Below the pieces are notes generated by a model. The model was not told the DNA's origin, did not search any database, and saw only the letters and a program-made list of their open reading frames with translations. From IMG/VR virus record IMGVR_UViG_3300018962_000001, positions 1 through 64,000 of that record: 64,000 nt of DNA. One strand, given 5' to 3'. Made by a program: the position numbers and the translations under genes. Positions 6,323 through 44,126 of this stretch are shown piece by piece; positions within the stretch are counted from its first letter, which is position 1, and the number at the start of each line of letters is the position of its first letter.

Positions 6323-6868
6323 CTACGGGGTCGATTCCATAAGCACCGGCCCGTTGCAATGCGTATCCAGATCGATCGCAAGCTGGACCACCATGTGCAG
6401 CCGGTCCAGCGGCTCCGGTTCGGCGGCGGCGGCGTTCAGTGCCCAATAGGCTCCAGTCGCGTAATCGCAGCCGCACCCGATCGCGGCAAACGGTCCCTTA
6501 AGCAGAACCACCGATCCGTTGCCATCGATTCGATACAACCGCCCATCACAGCCCAGGAGGACATTGCCGGGTCGTTGATTGCCCTCGGCCAATCCATCGC
6601 GCTCCTTCAGCGCGGCATGAATGGCCGGACTATAGGTGACGACCAGATATGAAAATACCGCGTCGGGATCAGCGGGCAGATCCAAGGGGACCACATAGCG
6701 CAGAAGCTGGTTCAGCAGGTAGGTGCCGCTCGATCCAACGACCGCCCGATCCATCCTCCAGATCTTCGGCATCGCGGTTTTATCCAGCTCCGATTGTCCC
6801 ACCACGCCATACGAATCGGCAGCGATCGTCACGCCGCCAGCATGCACTAATCCAGCAATAATCGTCAT
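6323..6868 (-). CDS. Ntn-hydrolase, HslV/proteasome beta-like peptidase
   Basis: N-terminal (M)T, AADS, PKIW, AIGCG: matches the Thr1/Asp17/Lys33/Ser129 pattern with Cys at the last position. Confidence 0.8.
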   Translation of the reverse strand: MTIIAGLVHAGGVTIAADSYGVVGQSELDKTAMPKIWRMDRAVVGSSGTYLLNQLLRYVVPLDLPADPDAVFSYLVVTYSPAIHAALKERDGLAEGNQRPGNVLLGCDGRLYRIDGNGSVVLLKGPFAAIGCGCDYATGAYWALNAAAAEPEPLDRLHMVVQLAIDLDTHCNGPVLMESTP

Positions 6869-6886
6869 CTCGTCATGTTCCTTGTG

Positions 6887-7249
6887 TTAGGCGCAGATCG
6901 CCTGCTCGATGGGGATTCCGCCAACATCGCGCAACGCTTCATCCACTGCGCCCTGCGCAACGAGCGGCAGACCCTGCCGTGATTGCGGATGCACGGCCCA
7001 CCCTCGCCCTGGAGCCGTTCCGGTCAGCAAATACACGCGATACAAGGTCACGGGCTGGCGGCGGCAGGACGGATCAGCCCAGGTTGCCAGGAGATACGTA
7101 TAGCCATCCCCCTGTGGTTCCCACTGCACAATCAGCAGCCATAACCGAGCGCCTGACGGGACTAAGGGTTCAAGATCCGTGAGCAACGGTCCACCTACTT
7201 CATAGGCAGCAGCTTCTGTTGCAACCATTGGATGCGGATCATGGAACAT
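6887..7249 (-). CDS. hypothetical protein
   Basis: ORF in operon orientation, RBS aaagga. Confidence 0.55.
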   Translation of the reverse strand: MFHDPHPMVATEAAAYEVGGPLLTDLEPLVPSGARLWLLIVQWEPQGDGYTYLLATWADPSCRRQPVTLYRVYLLTGTAPGRGWAVHPQSRQGLPLVAQGAVDEALRDVGGIPIEQAICA

Positions 7250-35400: not shown

Positions 35401-36148
35401 ACAGGAGCGCACGACCCGCAGCGGTCGGCGAGGGACCGAGGACGTTCCAAAACAGGACGCGCCCGGCCCCTCGTCGTTGGCGGCAGATCTGCCAGGCTTT
35501 GCGGTCGTAATTGGGGCAGGAATCAAAGGGCACCGCGATCTTCAATTCTTTCTCAAACGGCAACGCATACTCGATTACCGTGGCGCGACCGGGATCATCC
35601 ACATGCCGTCCGACCTGCACGGCATAAAAGCGGGCAGCGGGCATACCGGCTTGCAGTCCCCGCGTTAACACCCCCGATCCCGCCGCCGACCAGACCTCAT
35701 CAAACGGGCCATAGGTCTCCCAGACCTGCCGCGCCGCCCGTGCAATCGCGGCGTGCGCCCCCGCTCCGGCCCCGCCGAACTCCATATAGTGCGCGCCCTG
35801 CTCCTTGCAGTAGAGCTGGCATTTGGCCTGCACATGACTCAAGTAGCCATGTGGAACCTGGAAGATCCGCGCGCCGAGGGCTTTGGCTTCGAGCGTGCGC
35901 GGATGTGGCTCCTTGCGCTTTGCCACAAAGATCGTCGCGCGGCGGCCTGTGATCCGCGCACAGGCCGCCAGCGCCAGCTGTGCGCCGCCATACGCGGGCG
36001 AGGCATAGGCCACTTCCGCGTAGCGGGTAAACAACTGGATGAGATACCGCCCTTTGGTTCCCCCCGGCAGGCGATCGTCGCGAACCACGGCAATGCCCTG
36101 ATGATCCTCGACGATCGGCACGGTCTCATAGATCGCAGCAGTGGTCAT
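35366..36148 (-). CDS. PLP-dependent enzyme, fold type II (ACC deaminase/cysteine synthase-like)
   Basis: VRDDRLPGGTKGR (candidate Schiff-base Lys), AAGSGVLTRG phosphate loop; ATGA-coupled to the MTase. Confidence 0.8.
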   Translation of the reverse strand: MTTAAIYETVPIVEDHQGIAVVRDDRLPGGTKGRYLIQLFTRYAEVAYASPAYGGAQLALAACARITGRRATIFVAKRKEPHPRTLEAKALGARIFQVPHGYLSHVQAKCQLYCKEQGAHYMEFGGAGAGAHAAIARAARQVWETYGPFDEVWSAAGSGVLTRGLQAGMPAARFYAVQVGRHVDDPGRATVIEYALPFEKELKIAVPFDSCPNYDRKAWQICRQRRGAGRVLFWNVLGPSPTAAGRALLSSASASKSSVG

Positions 36149-38277
36149 AATTCCTCGCCATAGCGTCCTTCCGGCACCACCGGCGCGGCATGCCACGCTC
36201 CGGCGGACTGAATCGCGGACGGAATCGGATCAGCCACCGTGGGATCGGCAGCGGAGTCATCATAGGTGCCGGTCGGCACCTCGGCTCCGGTTTCCTCATC
36301 CACTTCGGTATCGTCCTCAATGTCGCCAAACTCGACCGGCCCGACCCACTCGGTCGCCTTGCGCCAATCGCCCTTGATGAAAATGAGGACGTTCTGATGA
36401 CTCTTACCCAACTTCCTCGCTTTTTCAAACTGACGCCCCACGCGCACGGCCAGCGATCCGATCGGCGTGACAAAGATGGCCTCATTATACAAGCGTGCCC
36501 CGGCATCTTCAAACGCCTGGATCGTGTGGCTCACAAAGTTGTGGTAGTGGCCGTCTTTATCGCGGACATCGCCAACCACAAAACACGCAAAGCGATCGGG
36601 CCGCAGCCGGGCGACCGCATGCGCGATAATTTCTCGGTAGATCGTGTGAAAATCCGCATAACTCATATTAGAAATATCACGGGGATCGTCCGAATAGACC
36701 TCCAGATCGGCATAGGGCGGACAACTGAAAATCAGATCAGCCTCAAAGTCCGGCCCCACCAGATCCGGCAACGTCCGCGAGTCGCCGCAATGCCAGATCG
36801 GCGTCGGGTCATCCGGGCGCAGGATCGATTCGATCTGGGATCGATTCGCGGCAACCTGCTCCGGGCGTAAATCAATGCCGGTATAGTGACGGCCCAGGTA
36901 GCCTGCGACGATTCCACGCACCGATCCCCCGGCAAAGGGATCAAGAATCTGCCCACCTTCCGCACAGAACCAGCGATACGCCAGCTCGGTCAGCACCGGG
37001 TCGAAGACGGACGTGCCGGTTTGCGACAAGCCCTCACCGGTCTGTTGGTTTATGTAATGGTCCCTTTGGAATTCCTCGGTCGTGAGCGGGCGGCCCAACT
37101 CCCGCTCTTTTTCGCGCTTTTGCTTATAGTAGCTCGGATCACGGCCCGAATCCGAGGTAAACAGCACGCCCGATGTATCGCGGGGAGCCTGTTTGCCGCT
37201 GGTCTTCATCCAGGCAGAATTCGGGCCGCCGCCGCCGCCGGGCGTGATCGCCTTTTCGCGTCGCCGGGCCTCACGATCGGTCCCCTCGCCTTCGGCCATG
37301 CGTGCCGAAAGTCCTCCGCCCCCGGCAGCGAGGCGATTGGACCCAGAAATGCCCTTGCCGTTGCCAATCGTATGTTCGCCCTTCATCAGATCTTGCCCGA
37401 AGGTGCGGCCATAGGACCGGGCCGCCCGTGCGCCTTGGGGCGAGTGCGCGTCCTCCCCGTCGCTGTCCGGCGGCGCATCAGCCTCTGCGCCGTCATGGTC
37501 CAATCGAGCCGCATACGCCTTCCGATCCCGGCGATACAGCTCCGATTCGCCACTGAGATTCTGGAGATTCGGGCCGCGCCCCAGCTCGCTCTGGATACCG
37601 AGTTTTAGCCAGGCTTTCTTGCGATCCGACCAATATCCTTGGCGGGCGTCGAGCACCGAGAAGGGCGGTACGCCAAACCGATCCGCCAGGGTTGCGCGCG
37701 CGGCTTCGGTGCTGGGCGTCGGAGCGGTCGCTGAGGAATCCGATCCAGAGTCATCCTGCGATTCCAGGTGCTCCAGCATATCGATCAAGGCCCGATCTTC
37801 GGCGGCCAGCTGGTCGTACAGCTCGGTATATTGTTCCTCGTCGCGAACCGCCAACGCGGCGATCGGGTCGAACGTCATCAAGGCCAGACGTTCTTCTTCC
37901 TGGCTGAGATGGACATAGATGACATCGATGAGCGGCAACCGGCGGCGCTGCGCGAGACTGACCCGGAGATGGCCGTCCACGATAAAGCCGGTTACCTCAT
38001 TGACGATGATCGGGGCGATAATCCCGATCCGGTTCATAATTTCCGTGAGGGCATCTTGTTGAATGCGAGTATGGATGCGCCAGTTTTCCGGGTGATTCAG
38101 CAGCGTATCCGGCGGTACCTTGACGAGCTTCACGATCTTGCTTTCCCACAGGGCGGCAAAATCGTCCGGGTCCGCCTGTTGGTGGGCCAGAATCTCGTCG
38201 ACGCGCTCCTCGCTGAGATCATGGATCTCAATCACGGGATGATCCGTGTCGTCCGATTCGGGGGCATGCGTGGTCAT
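36145..38277 (-). CDS. ParB/Srx N-terminal domain fused to SAM-dependent amino-methyltransferase-fold domain
   Basis: HPENWRIH..IVDGHLRV (ParB-like); ILDPFAGGSVRG (motif I); FSCPPYADLE (motif IV); RBS aaggag. Confidence 0.88.
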   Translation of the reverse strand: MTTHAPESDDTDHPVIEIHDLSEERVDEILAHQQADPDDFAALWESKIVKLVKVPPDTLLNHPENWRIHTRIQQDALTEIMNRIGIIAPIIVNEVTGFIVDGHLRVSLAQRRRLPLIDVIYVHLSQEEERLALMTFDPIAALAVRDEEQYTELYDQLAAEDRALIDMLEHLESQDDSGSDSSATAPTPSTEAARATLADRFGVPPFSVLDARQGYWSDRKKAWLKLGIQSELGRGPNLQNLSGESELYRRDRKAYAARLDHDGAEADAPPDSDGEDAHSPQGARAARSYGRTFGQDLMKGEHTIGNGKGISGSNRLAAGGGGLSARMAEGEGTDREARRREKAITPGGGGGPNSAWMKTSGKQAPRDTSGVLFTSDSGRDPSYYKQKREKERELGRPLTTEEFQRDHYINQQTGEGLSQTGTSVFDPVLTELAYRWFCAEGGQILDPFAGGSVRGIVAGYLGRHYTGIDLRPEQVAANRSQIESILRPDDPTPIWHCGDSRTLPDLVGPDFEADLIFSCPPYADLEVYSDDPRDISNMSYADFHTIYREIIAHAVARLRPDRFACFVVGDVRDKDGHYHNFVSHTIQAFEDAGARLYNEAIFVTPIGSLAVRVGRQFEKARKLGKSHQNVLIFIKGDWRKATEWVGPVEFGDIEDDTEVDEETGAEVPTGTYDDSAADPTVADPIPSAIQSAGAWHAAPVVPEGRYGEEL

Positions 38278-38287
38278 GGAACACTCC

Positions 38288-38674
38288 TTAGCGATCGAAG
38301 GCAGGCAAGACACCGGGCGTCGTTGGCGAGTCTGGAGGAAAGCGTCGCAGAAGATCGGCCAGCATCCCCTGAGTCGCGGCAAGCTGCGCTCCCAGCTCGG
38401 TCAGCTGGTCCTGCATCGCATCATCACCATCTCGACTTTGGGGAGAATCTTTGAACCGAAACCACCGCGCCAGAACGATAAACGCGCCGACCTGATGATA
38501 TTCGGACGCGAGGTTTTCAAAGGTCGTGGTGAGAAAATCAAGCCACCAGGGGGCAAGGTGCGGTGGGTAGCCCTCCTGCTGCCAATAGGTCAACATCGCA
38601 TGGGTGGCCCAGGTCAGGAGCCACCCACCGAGATACATCCAGCCTAACGAGTACTCATGCCAGAGGCGTTTCAT
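38288..38674 (-). CDS. small membrane protein (DUF6766-like)
   Basis: TTFENLASEYHQVGAFIVLARWFRFKDSPQSRD; two TM segments. Confidence 0.65.
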   Translation of the reverse strand: MKRLWHEYSLGWMYLGGWLLTWATHAMLTYWQQEGYPPHLAPWWLDFLTTTFENLASEYHQVGAFIVLARWFRFKDSPQSRDGDDAMQDQLTELGAQLAATQGMLADLLRRFPPDSPTTPGVLPAFDR

Positions 38675-38918
38675 CAGCGGACTCCTCTCCGAGATCGATC
38701 TGCGCGGGATCGATGATGCCCGCGTGGGTCAGCGCGCTTGCGAGCAGGCTGATCCGGTGTTCGAGGCGTTCGAGGCGCAGGCGTACCTCGGCGACCGTCT
38801 CCGGAAGATGCTCCACGTCGATCGGCGAACCGCGGGGAGCGCGCGTAGGTCCAGGCGCGGCGCGTGTCATCATCGTCCTCCTCAGAATCATCGGCGAAGC
38901 GTACGGCATCGGGTTCAT
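38655..38918 (-). CDS. coiled-coil hypothetical protein
   Basis: overlap-coupled. Confidence 0.5.
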   Translation of the reverse strand: MNPMPYASPMILRRTMMTRAAPGPTRAPRGSPIDVEHLPETVAEVRLRLERLEHRISLLASALTHAGIIDPAQIDLGEESADETPLA

Positions 38919-38983: not shown

Positions 38984-39802
38984 TCAAGGGTCCGGTTCGG
39001 CACGTGGCTCCGGTCCTTTCTGGTCGGCAGAATCATCGGGAACCGGACGCACCGCCAGGCCCGGCGTCGCCCAGGCGCGCACTTCGTCCTCAACCGGCTC
39101 CCCACGGAGCCGAAGAATCCCGGTGAACTTCGCGCCATCCGTGGTGCGCAGCTGGGTAACGGTCAGCTCCAAGCGAATCTCGGCTCCGGCTTTGGTTAAT
39201 CCGACCACCGCGATGGGGCGGCCCAGAATAGCGCTTTCGCCCGTGAGTAGATACCGCCGAACCCCCCGCTCATGGGCTACACGATAGCGCTCCGGCATCA
39301 AGCAGGTTAGCGGCTCGCCGATCATCTCACGTGCGCTATAGCCAAACAAGAGTTCAGCCCCTGGCGACCAGGATCGGACTCGCCCCTCGCGGTCCATACT
39401 GATCACGCCATCCAGGGCCGGATCAACCGCGCCTTGGCGGCGGCGGCGGAGTTCTTGGAACAGGGCGACTCGTTCCAGACGATCCAGCAGGGTCGATGCG
39501 ATCATGGCGATGCCAATCAGGGTAAACCCAAACGCAATGAGGTAGCGCACCTCGATCGGCGACGGCGGCATAAACAAGAGCACTACGCCAATGACCAGGA
39601 CAATCAGGGTCACCGTGAAGCGGAACAGGACATTGCGGAGATTTCCGATCGCAACAATGCGCTTCCCGCCATTCACACGGGCGCGCTCAATCAAGAGGAA
39701 GTCCGTCACAGCGCACCACAACCCCCAAGCATTCAGTGCAACGCCCAGGATCGCAGCCACGATCTGGAGTACCTCCGGCCACGGGATCAGCTCAGGTCTC
39801 AT
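38984..39802 (-). CDS. 3-TM holin-like protein fused to a FixL-like PAS domain
   Basis: three hydrophobic segments then DGVISMDREGRVRSWSPGAELLFGYSAREMIG..LMPERYRVAH..FTGILR; RBS gaggag. Confidence 0.88.
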   Translation of the reverse strand: MRPELIPWPEVLQIVAAILGVALNAWGLWCAVTDFLLIERARVNGGKRIVAIGNLRNVLFRFTVTLIVLVIGVVLLFMPPSPIEVRYLIAFGFTLIGIAMIASTLLDRLERVALFQELRRRRQGAVDPALDGVISMDREGRVRSWSPGAELLFGYSAREMIGEPLTCLMPERYRVAHERGVRRYLLTGESAILGRPIAVVGLTKAGAEIRLELTVTQLRTTDGAKFTGILRLRGEPVEDEVRAWATPGLAVRPVPDDSADQKGPEPRAEPDP

Positions 39803-40001
39803 GATCGGACTCCTCATGGTACCGCGCGTGGAGGGCGACCTGGCGCTCCACTTCCAACGCTTCTAACCGCACGGCTTGTTCTTCTTGCTGCTGGCGAAGA
39901 CGGCGCTGGCTCCGCCAGGCATCGAGGGCTTGGGGATCGGCGTGCCGTGGGGTGATGGGCTGCCCCAAGATCCAGCCTAACAACCGTAGCAACCGTAACA
40001 T
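39792..40001 (-). CDS. small basic coiled-coil protein, copy 2
   Basis: resembles 40777-40989; overlaps the PAS gene start. Confidence 0.6.
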   Translation of the reverse strand: MLRLLRLLGWILGQPITPRHADPQALDAWRSQRRLRQQQEEQAVRLEALEVERQVALHARYHEESDHET

Positions 40002-40062
40002 GGGCGTTTCCCAATACCAGCGAGATTGCCGACTTTGCTTCAGGGCTGGTGGCGAAGCGGGT

Positions 40063-40341
40063 CTAATCTGTGCCACGGCGGCGCTCCTCGTGATTTGGGG
40101 GCGTGCTGTCACGGGGGACCGAGCGGGTGACGCGCTCGGCTAAGCCGAGCGCTTTATCTGCCGCAAGCGTCCCGTTCAAGGCGAGTTCGCGCCACTCGGT
40201 AAGTTGGGTCTGCAATTCGGTATATTGCCACCCAAAGACCCACCATTTTTTATGCCCACCGATGAGGATCAGCAGCGCAATGACCGGCAGGCCGCCCTGA
40301 GAAATAAGATTCCAAATGTCGGCAATGGTCATGTCCCCCAT
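40063..40341 (-). CDS. holin-like small membrane protein
   Basis: single TM GGLPVIALLILIGG then WWVFGWQY and a coiled coil. Confidence 0.7.
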   Translation of the reverse strand: MGDMTIADIWNLISQGGLPVIALLILIGGHKKWWVFGWQYTELQTQLTEWRELALNGTLAADKALGLAERVTRSVPRDSTPPNHEERRRGTD

Positions 40342-40802
40342 GATCCTTCATCTTTCTGGGATGGCCGACCCTGCGGGGGGTTTGCAGTCCCGGCCACGGG
40401 AGTTCGTCCCAGTTCTTCGCGGATCAACGCCCGCCGGTCGCGTCGATCCAATAGGGCATCGACCACAATCCAGATCTCGGCAAGCACCAATAACCAGCGA
40501 CTAATGGATTGAGTCAGCGATGCGTTGGTCCCAATCCGCGGAGGGACAAACATTTGAATCACCCCAATCGTCGCAAGGACGAGCAGAATCACCAGAAAGG
40601 AGCTTGCCTTGCGAAGATTGCTGTGAATGATAATCTTCACTGATCGGGCGATCGGAACCCCAGATTCTTCGGCGTCTGCAAGGGCATAGCGCCGATCACC
40701 CCAATAGTCAATCACTAAAAGCAGATTGATGCCCAGACCGAGCAGGGCGATCAAGGTCCAGAGTACCTCCAGAAAGTCAACGGTGCGGGTAAGTACGAGC
40801 AC
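40329..40802 (-). CDS. 3-TM holin-like protein without PAS (paralogue of 38984-39802 N-terminus)
   Basis: EVLW..LGINL / NLRK..MFVPP / LLDRRDRRAL; RBS aaggag, GTG start. Confidence 0.75.
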   Translation of the reverse strand: MLVLTRTVDFLEVLWTLIALLGLGINLLLVIDYWGDRRYALADAEESGVPIARSVKIIIHSNLRKASSFLVILLVLATIGVIQMFVPPRIGTNASLTQSISRWLLVLAEIWIVVDALLDRRDRRALIREELGRTPVAGTANPPQGRPSQKDEGSWGT

Positions 40803-40989
40803 GGGTCGAATCTCCTTTCCTCCGCGCCTGGAGGCGCGCTTCTTCAGCCAGAGCGGCTAACCGCGCGTCAATCATGCGTTGGCGTTCGCGCGCGCGTGCG
40901 CGCGCAAGATCATCTGGCGTCGGCCCTGAATCGGTGGGCGTAGGTCGGTGGAACAGCTGCCGCAGCCATGTCAGCACTACGTTGCGCAC
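40777..40989 (-). CDS. small basic coiled-coil protein, copy 1
   Basis: WLRQLF..ARLAALAEEARL; GTG start inferred. Confidence 0.55.
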   Translation of the reverse strand: MRNVVLTWLRQLFHRPTPTDSGPTPDDLARARARERQRMIDARLAALAEEARLQARRKGDSTRARTYPHR

Positions 40990-40990
40990 A

Positions 40991-41512
40991 TCACCCTCGA
41001 TCCGGGAGGCCGACGAGCGCACGCGCCTGAGCATAGCCAGCCGATCCTCGATACCATTCTCGATCTGGTGGAAACCCAAAGCCCCAGTTCTGGGTCGCTT
41101 CCTGAACCCCCCGCATGACCTGCACAACATCCATCAACGACTCCCAGGTCACGAGGGACGCCGGATCGGCGTGCACAGGCAGGGTGCGTACCTCGCCAAG
41201 CCAGCGGGTAAAGGTCCGCCGTTGCGGATCGCGATACGATCGCAGCACGGCAGGCGCTCCGACCGGCAGCACGCCGCGCAACATGGTTTGCGCGGCGCGA
41301 CCCGCCTCACGCTCGGCAGCGGTGCCCCGGCGGCTTTCGGGCGTTTGAAGTCCCAGCAACCGAATCTCGATGTCCAGGGCCACTTCAAACCCCGGCCCGC
41401 CCAGAACATACACGGAGTCGCCATCGACGACCTCGGTGATCACCACGCGATAGATGGGCCAGGGCGCGACGGCTTTCAACGCAGCGGGAAACAGATCAAA
41501 CGGTCGAGGCAT
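40991..41512 (-). CDS. thermonuclease (SNase-like) protein
   Basis: VVDGDS, IRLLGLQTPE, TRWLG; RBS aaggagg. Confidence 0.8.
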   Translation of the reverse strand: MPRPFDLFPAALKAVAPWPIYRVVITEVVDGDSVYVLGGPGFEVALDIEIRLLGLQTPESRRGTAAEREAGRAAQTMLRGVLPVGAPAVLRSYRDPQRRTFTRWLGEVRTLPVHADPASLVTWESLMDVVQVMRGVQEATQNWGFGFPPDREWYRGSAGYAQARALVGLPDRG

Positions 41513-41529: not shown

Positions 41530-42585
41530 CTAAGGAATCTCCTGCGCGGGGGGGAGGGCAGGAACAGTGATCGGCGGACTGGCCGGAGCCTGTTCGAGTC
41601 GATGATGGACCACGGCGCGGCACCAGCGCTGGTAGAACAGGTCAAACAGTTCGCGCGCGTCCGGCGCATACGCCTTGGATCGATCGAGCCAGGTACGGAG
41701 CGTCGCACGGGCCTGCGTGCGGGCGATCTCGACCATCTGGCCGCGGAGCGTGTCGACAATCTGGGCGGCGATCAGATCGGGAGTACGGGCAGCAAGGTCG
41801 GCTAACGCTTGCTCAATCCGCGCACGCAAGTCATCGGGAAACACCGGACTCGTCTGACCGCCGGTATGCGCGCGGTACCGATCGATCCACCACGGGTTCC
41901 CAAACTGCCACAGGGCATCAGGAAACTTCGCCCACAGCACGCCCGCAATATGATCGTCGCTCACCGGCGACACCGCCGGAAGCTGGGCAATGCGAGTCTG
42001 TGCGTCGGCGGCGAGATCCTTGGCATAGTTGGCCCGCTCCACGGCATAGCTGGCCTGCTTCGCGGCGTCCGTTGCCAGCGTTCGGGCAGTGGTGGCAAGC
42101 CCCCGCGCCTCGGCGTCAATCGCCGGGCCAGGCGCGGGGGCTGACCCTCCTCCGCCCCCGATAGCCTCAACAAAGTGCGGCACCGACTCAAAATGACGAG
42201 CCCCAGCGGGATCGGTAAAGGCCATCTGGAGTCCCCAACCAGGCTGGTACGAAAGTTGGCCGCTTTCTTGGCGCGGGGTGACAAACTGTGCCCCCGCAGC
42301 ACTTTGACGCACCACATACCAGCCAAACTGGTTGTTGTCTTTCGGCGCATGGGCCTGGAAGAAAAACCCACTCCAAAAGATCGCGCCATCTGCCGATCGG
42401 TATGCGGCCTGCTGGTGCCCATACGTGGCATAGGAGGATGGTGATCCAATTCCCGCCTGCGCCGGACGCGGACGGTCGCCGTGGATCGCCTGAAGCTCCT
42501 CGGCAAAGCGGAGCATGGCATACTCCGCGGGATCGATCGCGGTAAATCCCGCTGGGGTATCTAACTGGAGGGTTGGAGCACTCAT
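41530..42585 (-). CDS. hypothetical protein in lysis operon
   Basis: ATGA-coupled to endolysin; Gly/Ala/Pro linker. Confidence 0.7.
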   Translation of the reverse strand: MSAPTLQLDTPAGFTAIDPAEYAMLRFAEELQAIHGDRPRPAQAGIGSPSSYATYGHQQAAYRSADGAIFWSGFFFQAHAPKDNNQFGWYVVRQSAAGAQFVTPRQESGQLSYQPGWGLQMAFTDPAGARHFESVPHFVEAIGGGGGSAPAPGPAIDAEARGLATTARTLATDAAKQASYAVERANYAKDLAADAQTRIAQLPAVSPVSDDHIAGVLWAKFPDALWQFGNPWWIDRYRAHTGGQTSPVFPDDLRARIEQALADLAARTPDLIAAQIVDTLRGQMVEIARTQARATLRTWLDRSKAYAPDARELFDLFYQRWCRAVVHHRLEQAPASPPITVPALPPAQEIP

Positions 42586-43745
42586 GATCCACCTTCCGGC
42601 CAGAAAACGCGCGCACCCGTCGCTGCGGTCCAGGCAATAATGCAGTGTGCAAAGACCTGATAGGTGGTCGAATCAATCAGGACTTCCGGGGCGGTTGCCG
42701 GGCCGGGATTGCGTCCGGCATCGACCAGCTCGCGCCACAAGCTCGCAATCCCCCACTCGGCAATATACGGAGCCTCCGTGCCCCACAGGCCGTGATAATC
42801 AGCCATATCATCGCTCCAATCGGTAATCCAGCGGCGCATGGTCAGGGCATCGGCGAATGGATTATTGGCCCCATCGCCGACCGGACTCCAGATGCACCGC
42901 ACGGTCGCAAGTTCATCATTGCCACTTGGGAAGTAGTCAGGTTTCTGCTCCAACCGATCCAGCACATCGTCCAGCGAATCCAGCCAGGAGTGAAAGACCG
43001 GCCAGCCCTCGACGGTGGCACGGACTCGACCGGGATTCATCGGCGTGCGCACATTTCCCCAATTCAGGGTGCGCGTCGCCACTCCCTCGGTGCCAAACGA
43101 CGATTCCTTCCCAATCAACGCCAGGATCGGACCCGGTTTGATTTTGCGCCGGAGAACGCGCGCGTAGCCATCCTGCGCATCCTCTGGCGACAGGATGGGC
43201 CGGAGCGCCCGAACCCACGGACTCAGGGGAATGTCGGGTGGCCCCCGAAGCTCATAGGGCGTCTGAAAACACAGATCGCGGAAGCTTGCCCAAAATGGGA
43301 AGTCGGTCGGATCGGTACGCGGCCCATTCAGCGAGGCAGGGCGACCCGCGGCGATGTCTTGGTGGCGCAGCAATCGCGGAAGCCGCAACGTTTGGCAGTC
43401 TCCCCGAATGACCTGGAGGCAGCGGGCGAGGTGTTCCGGGGACCAGCGTTCCCCCTTGCGATGCCCGATTTCCCAACCGACCCACTGGCTATTCCAGTGA
43501 TTACTCCAGGAATCAGACGCCGCGAGGCGTCCCCACCCCGCATGGTAGGCCACATGGCTCAGGGGGACCATCTCATACACGATGCCCTTGCGGCGCGGGA
43601 TGTACTTATGAATGCTGACGTTGGTGGTCAGGGCGGCGAGATCGCCCGGCTCGTGGCCCTCGGTGGTATGCACAATCCCACCGAGGGTGACCTTGCGCGG
43701 CCCACTGGTCGGTCCCCGTTTCGAGGTATTCACGCGGTAGTTCAT
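42582..43745 (-). CDS. endolysin: Amidase_2 + glucosaminidase/lysozyme-like domain + LGFP-like C-terminus
   Basis: IVHTTEG, SIHKYI, AYHAG, VGWEI (Zn amidase); GKESSFG..NWGNVR..VFHSWLDS. Confidence 0.88.
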   Translation of the reverse strand: MNYRVNTSKRGPTSGPRKVTLGGIVHTTEGHEPGDLAALTTNVSIHKYIPRRKGIVYEMVPLSHVAYHAGWGRLAASDSWSNHWNSQWVGWEIGHRKGERWSPEHLARCLQVIRGDCQTLRLPRLLRHQDIAAGRPASLNGPRTDPTDFPFWASFRDLCFQTPYELRGPPDIPLSPWVRALRPILSPEDAQDGYARVLRRKIKPGPILALIGKESSFGTEGVATRTLNWGNVRTPMNPGRVRATVEGWPVFHSWLDSLDDVLDRLEQKPDYFPSGNDELATVRCIWSPVGDGANNPFADALTMRRWITDWSDDMADYHGLWGTEAPYIAEWGIASLWRELVDAGRNPGPATAPEVLIDSTTYQVFAHCIIAWTAATGARVFWPEGGS

Positions 43746-43748
43746 CGC

Positions 43749-44126
43749 TTAGCCCTCCGGGATCGGATCATCCGACCTGGATTCAGTGGTGGACTCAGGA
43801 GCCGGGCGGCGGCGGCGGCGGTTTTGACGGCCTGCCGCCGCCTGGCTGGTGCTATTGAGTCCCGTCGCCGTGAGCCAGGCGCTGATGCTGGTAATCCCGA
43901 TCTGTGCCCAGGTTTGCCGAGTCCACGGATCGTCCACGGGCAGGGTTGCGGCAGCGAGAATGATCGTGAGCAGGATAGAGAGGCCCAAACCACCAAAAAA
44001 GGCGACCCAGCCCGGTCGTTCGGGCCAGTACATCGTTAACCCATTAATGGTGGCGAAAATAACCGCCGCGATCGACGATGCAAAAAGACCGATCTCGCCA
44101 GCCGTTTGAATTAAAGAACTATCCAT
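43749..44126 (-). CDS. putative holin (3 TM)
   Basis: three hydrophobic helices, basic C-terminal tail; directly upstream of endolysin; RBS ggagga. Confidence 0.75.
   Translation of the reverse strand: MDSSLIQTAGEIGLFASSIAAVIFATINGLTMYWPERPGWVAFFGGLGLSILLTIILAAATLPVDDPWTRQTWAQIGITSISAWLTATGLNSTSQAAAGRQNRRRRRPAPESTTESRSDDPIPEG

What the first reader, a model, noticed from the sequence alone, without database searches (positions are those of the whole stretch)
38984..40989. Lysis operon with a duplicated holin-like module, one copy carrying a FixL-like PAS sensor: possible signal-gated lysis
Seen: downstream of the holin (43749) and endolysin (42582), a two-gene unit occurs twice. Each unit is a ~70-aa basic coiled-coil gene followed by a 3-TM gene (40777-40989 + 40329-40802, then 39792-40001 + 38984-39802), with a 1-TM holin-like gene between the units. 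The two 3-TM proteins align by eye (EVLW/EVLQ, NLRK..MFVPP / NLRN..LFMPP, LLDRRDRRAL / LLDRLERVAL). Only the second continues into a full PAS domain and has no kinase or other output domain. Its LMPERYRVAH segment keeps a His where FixL PAS domains have the haem-ligating His. The RRRR after TM3 suggests the PAS is cytoplasmic. Established: class I holins such as lambda S105 have 3 TMs with a cytoplasmic C-terminus, and holin/antiholin pairs set lysis timing. Inference: the PAS copy is a sensor-antiholin (or sensor-holin) that hetero-oligomerises with its PAS-less twin and ties lysis timing to O2, redox or a metabolite. I know of no described PAS-holin fusion, but cannot exclude one without a search.
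Basis: partly seen in the sequence, partly recalled or inferred. Interest (0 to 1): 0.87.

Follow-up and report, generated by a model that had tools for sequence, protein, structure and literature searches.

The report
Haem-type sensor fused to lysis-cassette protein
A large uncultured phage, and a second unrelated phage, carry a membrane protein of a previously undescribed lysis-cassette family fused to a FixL-type PAS sensor domain, which suggests that some phages tie host-cell lysis directly to a chemical signal such as redox state or a gas.

Summary
38984-39802(-) encodes a 272-aa protein with three membrane helices followed by a PAS domain and no output domain. By sequence and by predicted fold, the PAS domain's nearest solved relatives are all FixL haem domains. 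The haem-ligating His is kept, but the O2-binding distal Arg is lost. 40329-40802(-) encodes a PAS-less paralogue of the membrane part.

Both belong to an undescribed family of about 130-aa 3-TM proteins, with 183 clusters in 1.84 billion proteins and no Pfam, PHROG or NCBIfam model. In every context long enough to judge, the family gene overlaps the end of a small upstream gene of about 65 aa. Often a conserved 1-TM gene comes first. A peptidoglycan hydrolase lies nearby in eight contexts.

The two window copies are distant paralogues, not a recent duplication. The same two-copy layout recurs in another contig.

The key new result is a second 3-TM/FixL-type PAS fusion in an unrelated 47.8-kb viral contig. 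There it sits between a GH108 endolysin and a Pfam-confirmed holin.

The most likely reading is a sensor-bearing regulator of lysis timing. Haem binding, the signal sensed and the effect on lysis are all inferred, not shown. I found no description of such a fusion. Interest is high.

The parts
38984..39802 (-). 3-TM/PAS fusion protein of 272 aa. Membrane family domain at residues about 1-125, continuous TM3-to-PAS helix at 83-125, FixL-type PAS at about 128-232, disordered tail at 235-272.
   Evidence: Pfam PAS 4.5e-8. The top 8 PDB sequence hits are all FixL. The top 20 Foldseek hits are FixL haem domains, with target TM-score up to 0.92. The family profile built without window sequences gives 113.6 bits. 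AF2 mean pLDDT is 80.4. There is an SD sequence (AGGAG) 7 nt before the ATG at 39802.
39792..40001 (-). Small partner gene of 69 aa. It has an N-terminal amphipathic W/L-rich segment, a Pro-rich linker and a coiled coil. Its 3' end overlaps the PAS gene start by 11 nt.
   Evidence: ORF. It aligns with the small genes that precede family members in L004, L005, L006 and L028. The same overlap occurs in all contexts.
40063..40332 (-). 1-TM protein of 89 aa, the first gene of the conserved trio. Motif GGHKKWWVFGWQY...EWRELALNGT.
   Evidence: One hydrophobic helix at 6-24. It is 53% identical to the L044 99-aa protein (E 2e-29), 46-49% to the L004 85-aa protein and 39% to the L006 79-aa protein, and 42% to the L047 protein.
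40329..40802 (-). PAS-less 3-TM paralogue of 157 aa, GTG start.
   Evidence: Family profile built without window sequences gives 109.9 bits. AF2 pLDDT is 88.9, with three helices at 10-47, 53-85 and 96-133. Its nearest relative is P0020, not the PAS copy. There is an SD sequence (AAGGAG) 9 nt upstream.
40777..40989 (-). Second small partner gene of about 70 aa from the GTG at 40989 (JGI aa from 41034). It is basic and overlaps the start of the 157-aa gene by 26 nt.
   Evidence: ORF. Its N-terminus VLTWLRQLFHRP fits the family motif in alignment A6.
40991..41512 (-). SNase-like endonuclease of 173 aa, in the same transcription direction, between the endolysin and the modules.
   Evidence: phrog_452 endonuclease 1.1e-9. 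Weak NCBIfam nuclease hits.
41530..42585 (-). 351-aa protein of unknown function directly downstream of the endolysin.
   Evidence: No family hit. Faint similarity to the cut 226-aa protein upstream of the module in L044 (E 0.008).
42582..43745 (-). Endolysin of 387 aa with an N-terminal Amidase_2 domain.
   Evidence: PF01510 1.4e-10, 42.1 bits against a cut-off of 26. PHROG amidase/endolysin hits.
43749..44126 (-). Holin candidate of 125 aa with 2-3 hydrophobic helices and a charged RRRRR-rich C-terminus, directly upstream of the endolysin.
   Evidence: Hydropathy. Only sub-threshold holin Pfam hits. A promoter-like site on the minus strand at 44344-44317 lies upstream.
38288..38870 (-). Two downstream genes in the same direction: a 71-aa coiled-coil protein (38655-38870) and a 128-aa DUF6766-like protein (38288-38674). 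Whether they belong to the module is unknown.
   Evidence: ORFs and JGI gene calls. PF20554 31.4 bits against a cut-off of 27.

Best explanation
The 272-aa protein is a sensor-equipped member of an undescribed phage lysis-cassette module. The module has three parts:
- a 1-TM protein of about 85 aa;
- a small protein of about 65 aa, predicted to be soluble and coiled-coil, and translationally coupled to the next gene;
- a 3-TM protein of about 130 aa, N-out/C-in. Its conserved motifs (loop NG.R.I.A.GN.R.E..R and C-terminal LDRRDR..L) sit on helical extensions at the cytoplasmic face.

I propose that the module assembles at the inner face of the membrane and sets when the holin/endolysin pair acts, either as an accessory holin or as a holin regulator. 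In this phage and one other, the variable cytoplasmic tail of the 3-TM protein is replaced by a FixL-type PAS domain, joined through one unbroken helix from TM3 into the PAS N-cap. The PAS domain probably carries haem on His177. A change in its state (iron redox state, or binding of a gas or other ligand) would alter PAS dimer geometry. That change would pass up the helix and alter the packing or oligomerisation of the membrane domain, advancing or delaying lysis according to the host's redox or energy state.

Shown: the domain architecture, family membership, gene order, recurrence next to endolysins and holins, a second independent example of the fusion, and FixL-type sequence and predicted fold with the proximal His kept.

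Inferred: haem binding, the nature of the signal, any effect on lysis, and interactions among the three proteins.
For: Family
- A profile of the two membrane domains finds 183 clusters at E<=1e-3 among 1.84e9 proteins. Nearly all are 120-160 aa and full length. The alignments show the conserved motifs.

Context
- A peptidoglycan hydrolase lies within about 4 kb in the window (Amidase_2), L004, L006, L013, L028 (GH25), L037, L045 (GH25, weak precomputed Pfam hit) and L047 (GH108).
- An overlapping small upstream gene is present in every context that includes the upstream DNA.
- The 1-TM gene is conserved at 39-53% identity.

PAS domain
- The top PDB hits by sequence are all FixL (1d06, E 2.7e-14, ungapped over 108 aa).
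- The best NCBIfam model is FixL.
- Foldseek gives an rmsd of 1.4-1.5 A over 104 residues to BjFixLH. DosP/EcDOS and another haem PAS come next.
- The proximal His is invariant across both phage proteins and four cellular homologues.

Second fusion
- In L047, a 247-aa protein at 6353-7096 has a 3-TM domain that the family profile scores at 37.8 bits, plus a PAS domain whose top seven PDB hits are FixL.
- It is flanked by the 1-TM and small genes, a GH108 endolysin and a Phage_holin_10 holin (49.2 bits against a cut-off of 27).

Model and alternatives excluded
- The AF2 model has helix 83-125 running from TM3 into the PAS domain.
- The TM domain is not a host sensor anchor.
- There are no defence-system hits.
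Against: - No member of the 3-TM family, the small-protein family or the 1-TM family has any experimental or annotated function.
- No holin model in Pfam, PHROGs or NCBIfam matches, and there is no structural match in BFVD.
- The family was not found among 50,697 isolated-phage records by tblastn. No cultured system is therefore at hand.
- In the window the module is separated from the endolysin by two unrelated genes.
- The haem pocket is incomplete.
  - BjFixL R220 is Ile in the window and Ser in L047.
  - H214 is Ala in the window.
  - R206 is Asp in L047.
- The two phage PAS domains share only about 18% identity (32 bits over a 45-residue local match). Conservation of a common ligand is therefore not demonstrated.
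- Only two fusions were found.
Confidence: 0.4

Rival explanations
1. The 3-TM proteins are themselves class-I-type holins or antiholins. The PAS copy hetero-oligomerises with its PAS-less twin and ties hole formation to O2.
For: - Three TM helices with N-out/C-in topology, a size like lambda S, and a charged segment after TM3.
- Lysis-cassette location (see the contexts under the best explanation).
- A two-paralogue layout flanking the 1-TM gene recurs in L044.
Against: - The second fusion locus, L047, has no PAS-less 3-TM partner but does have a bona fide holin next door.
- The window also has its own holin candidate beside the endolysin.
- The conserved motifs are cytoplasmic and partner genes are conserved. 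That fits a regulatory complex better than a bare hole-former.
- The distal Arg needed for FixL-type O2 binding is absent.
Confidence: 0.2
2. The module is lysis-related, but the PAS domain is a ligand-free dimerisation or scaffold domain. On this view it is a degenerate FixL fold that only replaces the coiled-coil tails seen in other family members.
For: - Longer family members carry low-complexity or coiled-coil C-terminal tails in the same position.
- Several haem-pocket residues are lost, and lost differently, in the two fusions.
- PAS domains commonly dimerise through their N-cap helices (established knowledge; see also the dimeric FixL PAS entries 8js5/8js6).
Against: - The proximal His is kept in both phage proteins even though the two domains are barely alignable to each other.
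- Both remain closest to haem-binding PAS domains among all solved structures.
- Two diverged phages both carry this particular PAS subtype rather than any other dimeriser.
Confidence: 0.2
3. The protein is a membrane-tethered PAS decoy. It heterodimerises with host FixL-like PAS-GGDEF or PAS-kinase sensors and rewires host signalling during infection. It does not control lysis.
For: - The nearest sequence relatives of the PAS domain are cellular membrane-bound PAS-GGDEF and PAS-histidine-kinase proteins (36-38% identity).
- The phage protein has no output domain of its own.
Against: - The membrane domain is not that of those sensors. It belongs to the lysis-cassette family.
- In both phages the fusion occupies the 3-TM slot of the trio next to lysis genes.
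Confidence: 0.1
4. The trio is not a lysis function at all. It would be, for example, a superinfection-exclusion or membrane-remodelling module that merely travels in the late-gene region near the lysis and tail genes.
For: - No functional annotation exists for any member.
- The position relative to the endolysin varies: upstream, downstream, or separated by other genes.
Against: - The module stays linked to peptidoglycan hydrolases of three different families (Amidase_2, GH25, GH108), in contigs with G+C from 44% to 71%.
- Where compared (window against L004), the endolysins are no longer alignable.
- There are no PADLOC hits.
Confidence: 0.1

Closest known systems
FixL haem-PAS oxygen-sensor domain (Bradyrhizobium japonicum and Sinorhizobium meliloti FixL; PDB 1dp6, 1d06, 2vv6)
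   Same: - It is the best match by sequence (E 2.7e-14, ungapped) and by predicted fold (target TM-score 0.92, rmsd 1.5 A).
- The motif LMPxxxRxxH...RY is shared, with the proximal His, R206 and Y207 kept in the window protein.
   Different: - There is no histidine kinase or any other output domain.
- The domain is attached C-terminally to a phage 3-TM domain, not N-terminally to a kinase.
- The distal O2-binding Arg (R220) is replaced by Ile, and H214 by Ala.
- Haem binding is untested.
Class I holins and the holin/antiholin pair of phage lambda (S105/S107)
   Same: - A small 3-TM membrane protein, predicted N-out/C-in, with a charged cytoplasmic C-terminal segment, encoded in a lysis cassette.
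- Two related forms are present in one phage.
   Different: - There is no profile or structural similarity to any described holin family.
- There is no dual-start motif. The upstream ATG at 39817 lacks an SD sequence, whereas 39802 has AGGAG.
- The two forms are separate, distantly related genes.
- Dedicated partner genes are present (1-TM and small).
- A separate holin is present in the same cassettes.
T4-type lysis inhibition (holin T with antiholins RI and RIII) and ICP1 lysis inhibition
   Same: - Lysis timing is changed after translation, by proteins that bind the holin in response to an environmental cue.
- One partner (RIII) is a small cytoplasmic protein (PMC11413866, PMC8385771, PMC7182436).
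   Different: - The cue there is superinfection, sensed in the periplasm.
- There is no homology.
- There is no ligand-binding sensor fold of the PAS type.
Multi-component holin-like sets of actinobacteriophages and P1 (LysF1a/LysF1b; LydA-D)
   Same: Several small TM proteins in one lysis cassette jointly set lysis timing (PMC13056207, PMC9025707).
   Different: - The topologies and sequences differ.
- None carries a sensor domain.
Output-less ('short') PAS/LOV proteins and other phage-encoded PAS proteins
   Same: - A PAS domain with only helical extensions and no enzymatic output. Short LOV proteins appear among the fold hits.
- PAS proteins do occur in phage and giant-virus proteomes.
   Different: - Those are soluble, or are parts of kinases or GGDEF proteins.
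- None is reported fused to a lysis-cassette membrane domain.

Membership tests
PAS domain (Pfam clan PAS_Fold) | Profile match above the curated threshold | tested here: met
   PF00989 scores 33.5 bits against a cut-off of 22.6. PAS_4 and PAS_9 are also above their cut-offs. TIGR00229 scores 53.4 bits against 22.9.
PAS domain (Pfam clan PAS_Fold) | Five-stranded antiparallel sheet flanked by helices | tested here: met
   The AF2 model has strands at 132-136, 141-145, 197-202, 208-220 and 223-232, with helices between them. Foldseek probability is 1.00 to many PAS structures.
FixL/DOS-type haem-binding PAS sensor | Proximal His on the F-alpha helix that ligates haem iron (BjFixL His200) | tested here: met
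   His177 aligns without gaps to the FixL His. It is invariant in alignment A10, which includes the second phage fusion.
FixL/DOS-type haem-binding PAS sensor | Distal Arg on G-beta that binds O2 and drives the switch (BjFixL Arg220) | tested here: not met
   The column where 1y28 (R220A) differs from 1dp6 is Ile197 in the window protein and Ser in L047.
FixL/DOS-type haem-binding PAS sensor | Residues that contact the haem propionates (BjFixL Arg206, His214) | tested here: inconclusive
   In the window protein R183 corresponds to R206 and is kept, while A191 corresponds to H214 and is lost. In L047, R206 is Asp and H214 is Arg. The FixL residue numbering is from established knowledge.
FixL/DOS-type haem-binding PAS sensor | Bound haem b and ligand-dependent spectra | not testable with these tools
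   This needs purified protein.
FixL (the two-component sensor kinase itself) | Histidine-kinase transmitter domain following the PAS domain | tested here: not met
   There is no HisKA or HATPase hit. The protein ends 40 residues after the PAS domain in a disordered tail. The NCBIfam FixL equivalog scores 54.6 bits against a cut-off of 850.
Holin (class I) | Small membrane protein with three TM helices, N-out/C-in | tested here: met
   Hydropathy and positive-inside charge distribution. AF2 gives three helices. This is a prediction only.
Holin (class I) | Encoded in a lysis cassette with an endolysin | tested here: met
   For the family, this holds in eight contexts. The window copies lie 1.8-2.8 kb downstream of the endolysin in the same gene string.
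Holin (class I) | Match to a described holin family | tested here: not met
   No Pfam, PHROG or NCBIfam holin model matches either window protein or 46 family members. The best BFVD fold hit has E 0.26.
Holin (class I) | Forms lethal membrane lesions that release endolysin at a set time | not testable with these tools
   This needs expression and complementation assays.
Antiholin | Binds and inhibits the cognate holin | not testable with these tools
   No multimer prediction or interaction assay was available.
New 3-TM lysis-cassette family (defined here) | Full-length match to a profile built from other members, with the motifs E..W, D..D, NG.R.I.A.GN.R.E..R, PP and LDRRDR | tested here: met
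   Against the profile built without window sequences, the scores are 113.6 bits (PAS copy), 109.9 bits (157-aa copy), 94.9 bits (L044 second copy) and 37.8 bits (L047 fusion).

The most novel reading that the evidence does not exclude
Some phages carry a built-in chemical sensor in their lysis machinery. A haem-PAS domain on a lysis-cassette membrane protein reads the host's redox, gas or energy state. It gates the moment of lysis directly, after translation, without any transcriptional circuit. The 1-TM, small and 3-TM trio would then be a new, widespread lysis-timing device, of which the PAS fusions are the signal-responsive form.
Probability: 0.3. Interest if true: 0.9.

Novelty: new variant of a known kind. 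Interest (0 to 1): 0.78.

Why it matters
Lysis timing is a central life-history trait of phages. It is known to be set by holin accumulation and membrane energisation. Among the cases I compared, the environmental cue that retunes it is superinfection (T4 and ICP1 lysis inhibition).

A ligand-sensing PAS domain wired into a lysis-cassette membrane protein would be a direct route by which oxygen, redox state or another small molecule could advance or delay lysis. That bears on phage ecology in soils, sediments and other habitats with redox gradients. It would also supply a compact natural part for signal-gated cell lysis.

Whatever the PAS domain does, the work defines an undescribed three-gene module found next to endolysins in many uncultured phages. 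That module is a concrete target for lysis research.

Tried and rejected
- Near-identity and protein searches of 50,697 isolated-phage records found nothing for the region, the PAS protein or the 1-TM protein.
- The word-indexed protein search found only PAS-level hits for the fusion and nothing for the 157-aa protein. It found only four hits for the family profile.
I replaced them with degenerate DNA patterns.
  - Most pattern hits were chance matches and were removed by HMM screening.
  - One viral scan gave nothing.
- A dual-start (lambda S107-like) reading of MRSPIM was considered and rejected, because only the second ATG has an SD sequence.
- I considered the idea that TM2-TM3 were captured together with the PAS domain from a host PAS-GGDEF protein, since the BLAST alignment to P0003 starts at residue 69. 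I rejected it because the family profile does not see that protein's TM region.
- The weak DUF202 hit (E 0.007-0.06, below threshold) was not pursued.
- The holin candidates and endolysins of the different contigs are not alignable to one another, so they gave no extra linkage evidence.
- An attempt to extend L044 through its 1-TM protein found only the same contig.
Full report
**Source and setting**

The window is the first 64 kb of a 204,685-bp metagenomic contig (JGI 3300018962, Ga0193589_1000010). IMG/VR lists the contig as a viral genome, and window and contig coordinates coincide. The window encodes:
- a large terminase, 49.6% identical to that of Thermobifida phage P1312;
- a DnaB-type helicase, a replication initiator and a ParB-methyltransferase fusion.

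There are no tRNAs. G+C is about 61%. There is no nucleotide match to any isolated phage.

A promoter-like site on the minus strand at 44344-44317 sits in a divergent intergenic region. From there a string of co-directional minus-strand genes runs down to about 35.4 kb:

| Coordinates | Product |
|---|---|
| 43749-44126 | Holin candidate, 125 aa |
| 42582-43745 | Amidase_2 endolysin |
| 41530-42585 | 351-aa unknown |
| 40991-41512 | SNase-like nuclease |
| 40777-40989/41034 | Small gene |
| 40329-40802 | 3-TM gene, 157 aa |
| 40063-40332 | 1-TM gene, 89 aa |
| 39792-40001 | Small gene, 69 aa |
| 38984-39802 | 3-TM/PAS gene, 272 aa |
| 38655-38870 and 38288-38674 | Two small genes |
| 36145-38382 | ParB-methyltransferase |

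**Checking the observation**

The ORFs, the three hydrophobic helices in each of the two larger proteins, the single helix in the 89-aa protein and the RRRR after TM3 are all present. The charge distribution favours an N-out/C-in topology, which places the PAS domain in the cytoplasm.

The start at 39802 is supported by an AGGAG 7 nt upstream. The start at 40802 is supported by an AAGGAG 9 nt upstream. Both starts lie within the end of the preceding small gene, so each pair is probably translationally coupled.

The two membrane domains are significantly similar (28% over 74 aa, E 3e-6). The two small proteins are not detectably similar in a pairwise comparison (E 23).

**The PAS domain**

Pfam calls a PAS domain above threshold, and nothing follows it.
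- Against all PDB sequences, the eight best hits are FixL haem domains. The best is E 2.7e-14, ungapped over 108 residues. DosP/EcDOS follows.
- The best NCBIfam model is rhizobial FixL, at domain level only.
- An AlphaFold model (mean pLDDT 80.4) gives a PAS fold. Its 20 best Foldseek matches in the PDB are all FixL haem domains (target TM-score up to 0.92, rmsd 1.4-1.5 A over 104 residues). Other haem PAS domains follow.
- His177 aligns with the haem-ligating His. R183 and Y184 match BjFixL R206 and Y207.
- The column where the R220A mutant entry 1y28 differs from wild type is Ile in the phage protein. H214 is Ala (FixL residue numbering is from established knowledge).

The domain is therefore of the haem-PAS lineage and keeps the iron ligand. 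It lacks the Arg that FixL uses to hold O2.

**The membrane domain is a new family**

Word-indexed searches found no relatives. A profile of the two membrane domains, run against 1.84 billion representative proteins, found 183 clusters at E<=1e-3.
- Almost all are 120-160 aa and match over their full length.
- They share clear motifs: E..W at the start of TM1, D..D after TM1, NG.R.I.A.GN.R.E..R before TM2, PP after TM2 and LDRRDR..L after TM3.
- A profile built without the window proteins still scores them at 113.6 and 109.9 bits.
- No Pfam, PHROG, NCBIfam or PADLOC model matches the family.
- A confident model of the 157-aa protein (pLDDT 88.9; three helices of 33-38 residues, longer than a bilayer is thick) has no structural match in BFVD.
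- The profile does not recognise the TM regions of the cellular PAS-GGDEF and PAS-kinase proteins that are the nearest relatives of the PAS domain. The anchor was therefore not imported with the PAS domain.
- Longer family members have low-complexity or coiled-coil C-terminal tails and no globular domains.

**Genomic context of the family**

I obtained eleven further contexts.
- The family gene is preceded by an overlapping gene of about 60-75 aa in L004, L005, L006, L028, L036, L037, L038, L044 and L045, and as an uncalled ORF in L035.
- These small proteins share an N-terminal W-L-R-R-L-L-x-x-P motif and a C-terminal coiled coil.
- A 1-TM protein with the motif WW.FGWQY...EWR.LAL.G precedes the pair in the window, L004, L006, L035, L036, L045 and L047. 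In L044 it lies between the two 3-TM genes. Identity to the window protein is 39-53%.
- A peptidoglycan hydrolase is nearby in eight contexts:
  - Amidase_2 in the window, L004, L006, L013 and L037;
  - GH25 in L028 and L045;
  - GH108 in L047.
- The loci range from 44% to 73% G+C. The one genome hit is a Chloroflexi MAG.

The recurring unit is thus a trio, linked to lysis genes across very different phages.

**The two window copies**

They are not sisters. The 157-aa protein groups with P0020 (local support 96). The PAS copy lies elsewhere in a poorly resolved tree, and their best BLAST partners differ.

The contig carrying P0020 (L044, 1,987 bp) has the same layout as the window:
- a small gene;
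- 3-TM gene A;
- the 1-TM gene (53% identical to the window protein);
- a second 3-TM gene, cut by the contig end just after its DRRERR motif.

The two-paralogue arrangement is therefore conserved rather than a recent accident. Whether the second copy in L044 carries a PAS domain is unknown.

**A second fusion**

A search with the 1-TM protein found a 47.8-kb viral contig from another metagenome (IMG/VR UViG_3300036850_000027; L047/L049). Its gene order is:
- a GH108/PG_binding_3 endolysin;
- two small genes, one of them a 1-TM coiled-coil protein;
- the trio's 1-TM gene;
- the small gene;
- a 247-aa protein;
- a Phage_holin_10 holin above the Pfam threshold.

The 247-aa protein has three hydrophobic helices that match the family profile (37.8 bits, E 1.3e-4 at the size of the whole library). 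It also has a PAS domain whose seven best PDB hits are FixL. It aligns with the window protein across the membrane domain, the junction and the first half of the PAS domain (27% over 176 aa, E 6e-12).

The proximal His is kept. R220 is Ser and R206 is Asp.

Each phage PAS domain is closer to cellular FixL-type PAS domains (81 and 61 bits) than the two are to each other (32 bits). The fusion is therefore either old and fast-evolving or arose twice. Either way, this PAS subtype has been retained in this slot. Two further pattern scans of IMG/VR found no third case.

**Interpretation**

The evidence places the 272-aa protein in the 3-TM slot of a conserved, uncharacterised lysis-cassette trio, with a FixL-type PAS domain replacing the usual variable cytoplasmic tail. 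The model shows one helix running from TM3 (residue 83) to residue 125, at the edge of the PAS core. This is the kind of rigid connection that sensor proteins use to pass conformational changes along.

I therefore favour a sensor-bearing regulator of lysis timing. The PAS domain, probably with haem on His177, would report redox state or a diatomic gas or other ligand to the membrane domain.

A bona fide holin beside the fusion in L047, and a separate holin candidate in the window, argue that the 3-TM protein is an accessory or regulator rather than the sole holin. Loss of the distal Arg makes FixL-like O2 sensing unlikely as such. Redox state, CO, NO or a non-haem ligand remain open. All functional steps are inferences.

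**Novelty**

Full-text searches for holin or antiholin together with PAS, sensor domain or haem returned no description of such a protein. The nearest concepts are:
- T4 and ICP1 lysis inhibition (PMC11413866, PMC8385771, PMC7182436);
- multi-component holin-like sets (PMC13056207, PMC9025707).

I rate it a new variant of a known kind, namely post-translational control of lysis timing, built on a new protein family.

Noticed in passing
L044:1618-1986 (Logan SRR32206248_43574): A second 3-TM family gene follows the 1-TM gene, as in the window. The contig ends right after the DRRERR motif, at the exact point where the window protein continues into its PAS domain.
   Followed up: partly
L043:39102-40734 (Cellulophaga phage phi18:3, KC821620): BFVD fold hits to the whole fusion model include small uncharacterised phage proteins. 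One is a 172-aa protein of phage phi18:3. A 172-aa gene with one N-terminal TM helix (gp090) lies just before a multi-TM protein (gp091) and a GH108 endolysin (gp092). gp090 has no Pfam PAS hit. The link to the BFVD entry rests on length alone.
   Followed up: partly
L028:849-1511 and L036:733-1397: In two related contigs the 3-TM gene is followed by a conserved hydrophobic protein of 145/146 aa (72% identical between the two contigs) and a GerE/LuxR-type HTH gene. In L028 a GH25 lysozyme follows; in L036 the next gene is a cut, unidentified 321-aa ORF. A transcription regulator inside a lysis cassette is unusual.
   Followed up: partly
window:48439-50355 (+): A 638-aa phage protein. The precomputed Pfam hits are purple acid phosphatase N-terminal, metallophosphatase, and the carbohydrate-binding modules CBM_6 and CBM_35.
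   Followed up: no
window:40991-41512 (-): An SNase-like endonuclease gene (phrog_452) sits inside the lysis gene string, between the endolysin and the membrane modules.
   Followed up: no
window:35366-36196 (-) and 36145-38382 (-): A PALP (pyridoxal-phosphate-dependent enzyme) gene follows a 710-745-aa ParB-like/DNA-methyltransferase fusion at the end of the same gene string.
   Followed up: no
window:38288-38674 (-): A 128-aa protein just downstream of the PAS gene matches DUF6766 above the Pfam cut-off (31.4 bits against 27). It is Trp-rich and its function is unknown.
   Followed up: no
window:3525-4949 (-) against the whole contig: The large terminase resembles those of 50-70-kb Thermobifida and Streptomyces siphophages (up to 49.6% identity). 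The contig is nevertheless 205 kb, and the same protein also occurs on a 225-kb contig. Whether the whole contig is one jumbo phage genome was not checked.
   Followed up: no
window:33463-34587 (+): A phage-encoded 374-aa protein with a von Willebrand factor A domain (precomputed Pfam hit).
   Followed up: no
L047:5596-5961: A 121-aa protein with an N-terminal TM helix and a long coiled coil lies between the GH108 endolysin and the trio. It resembles an i-spanin, but no lipoprotein partner was seen.
   Followed up: no
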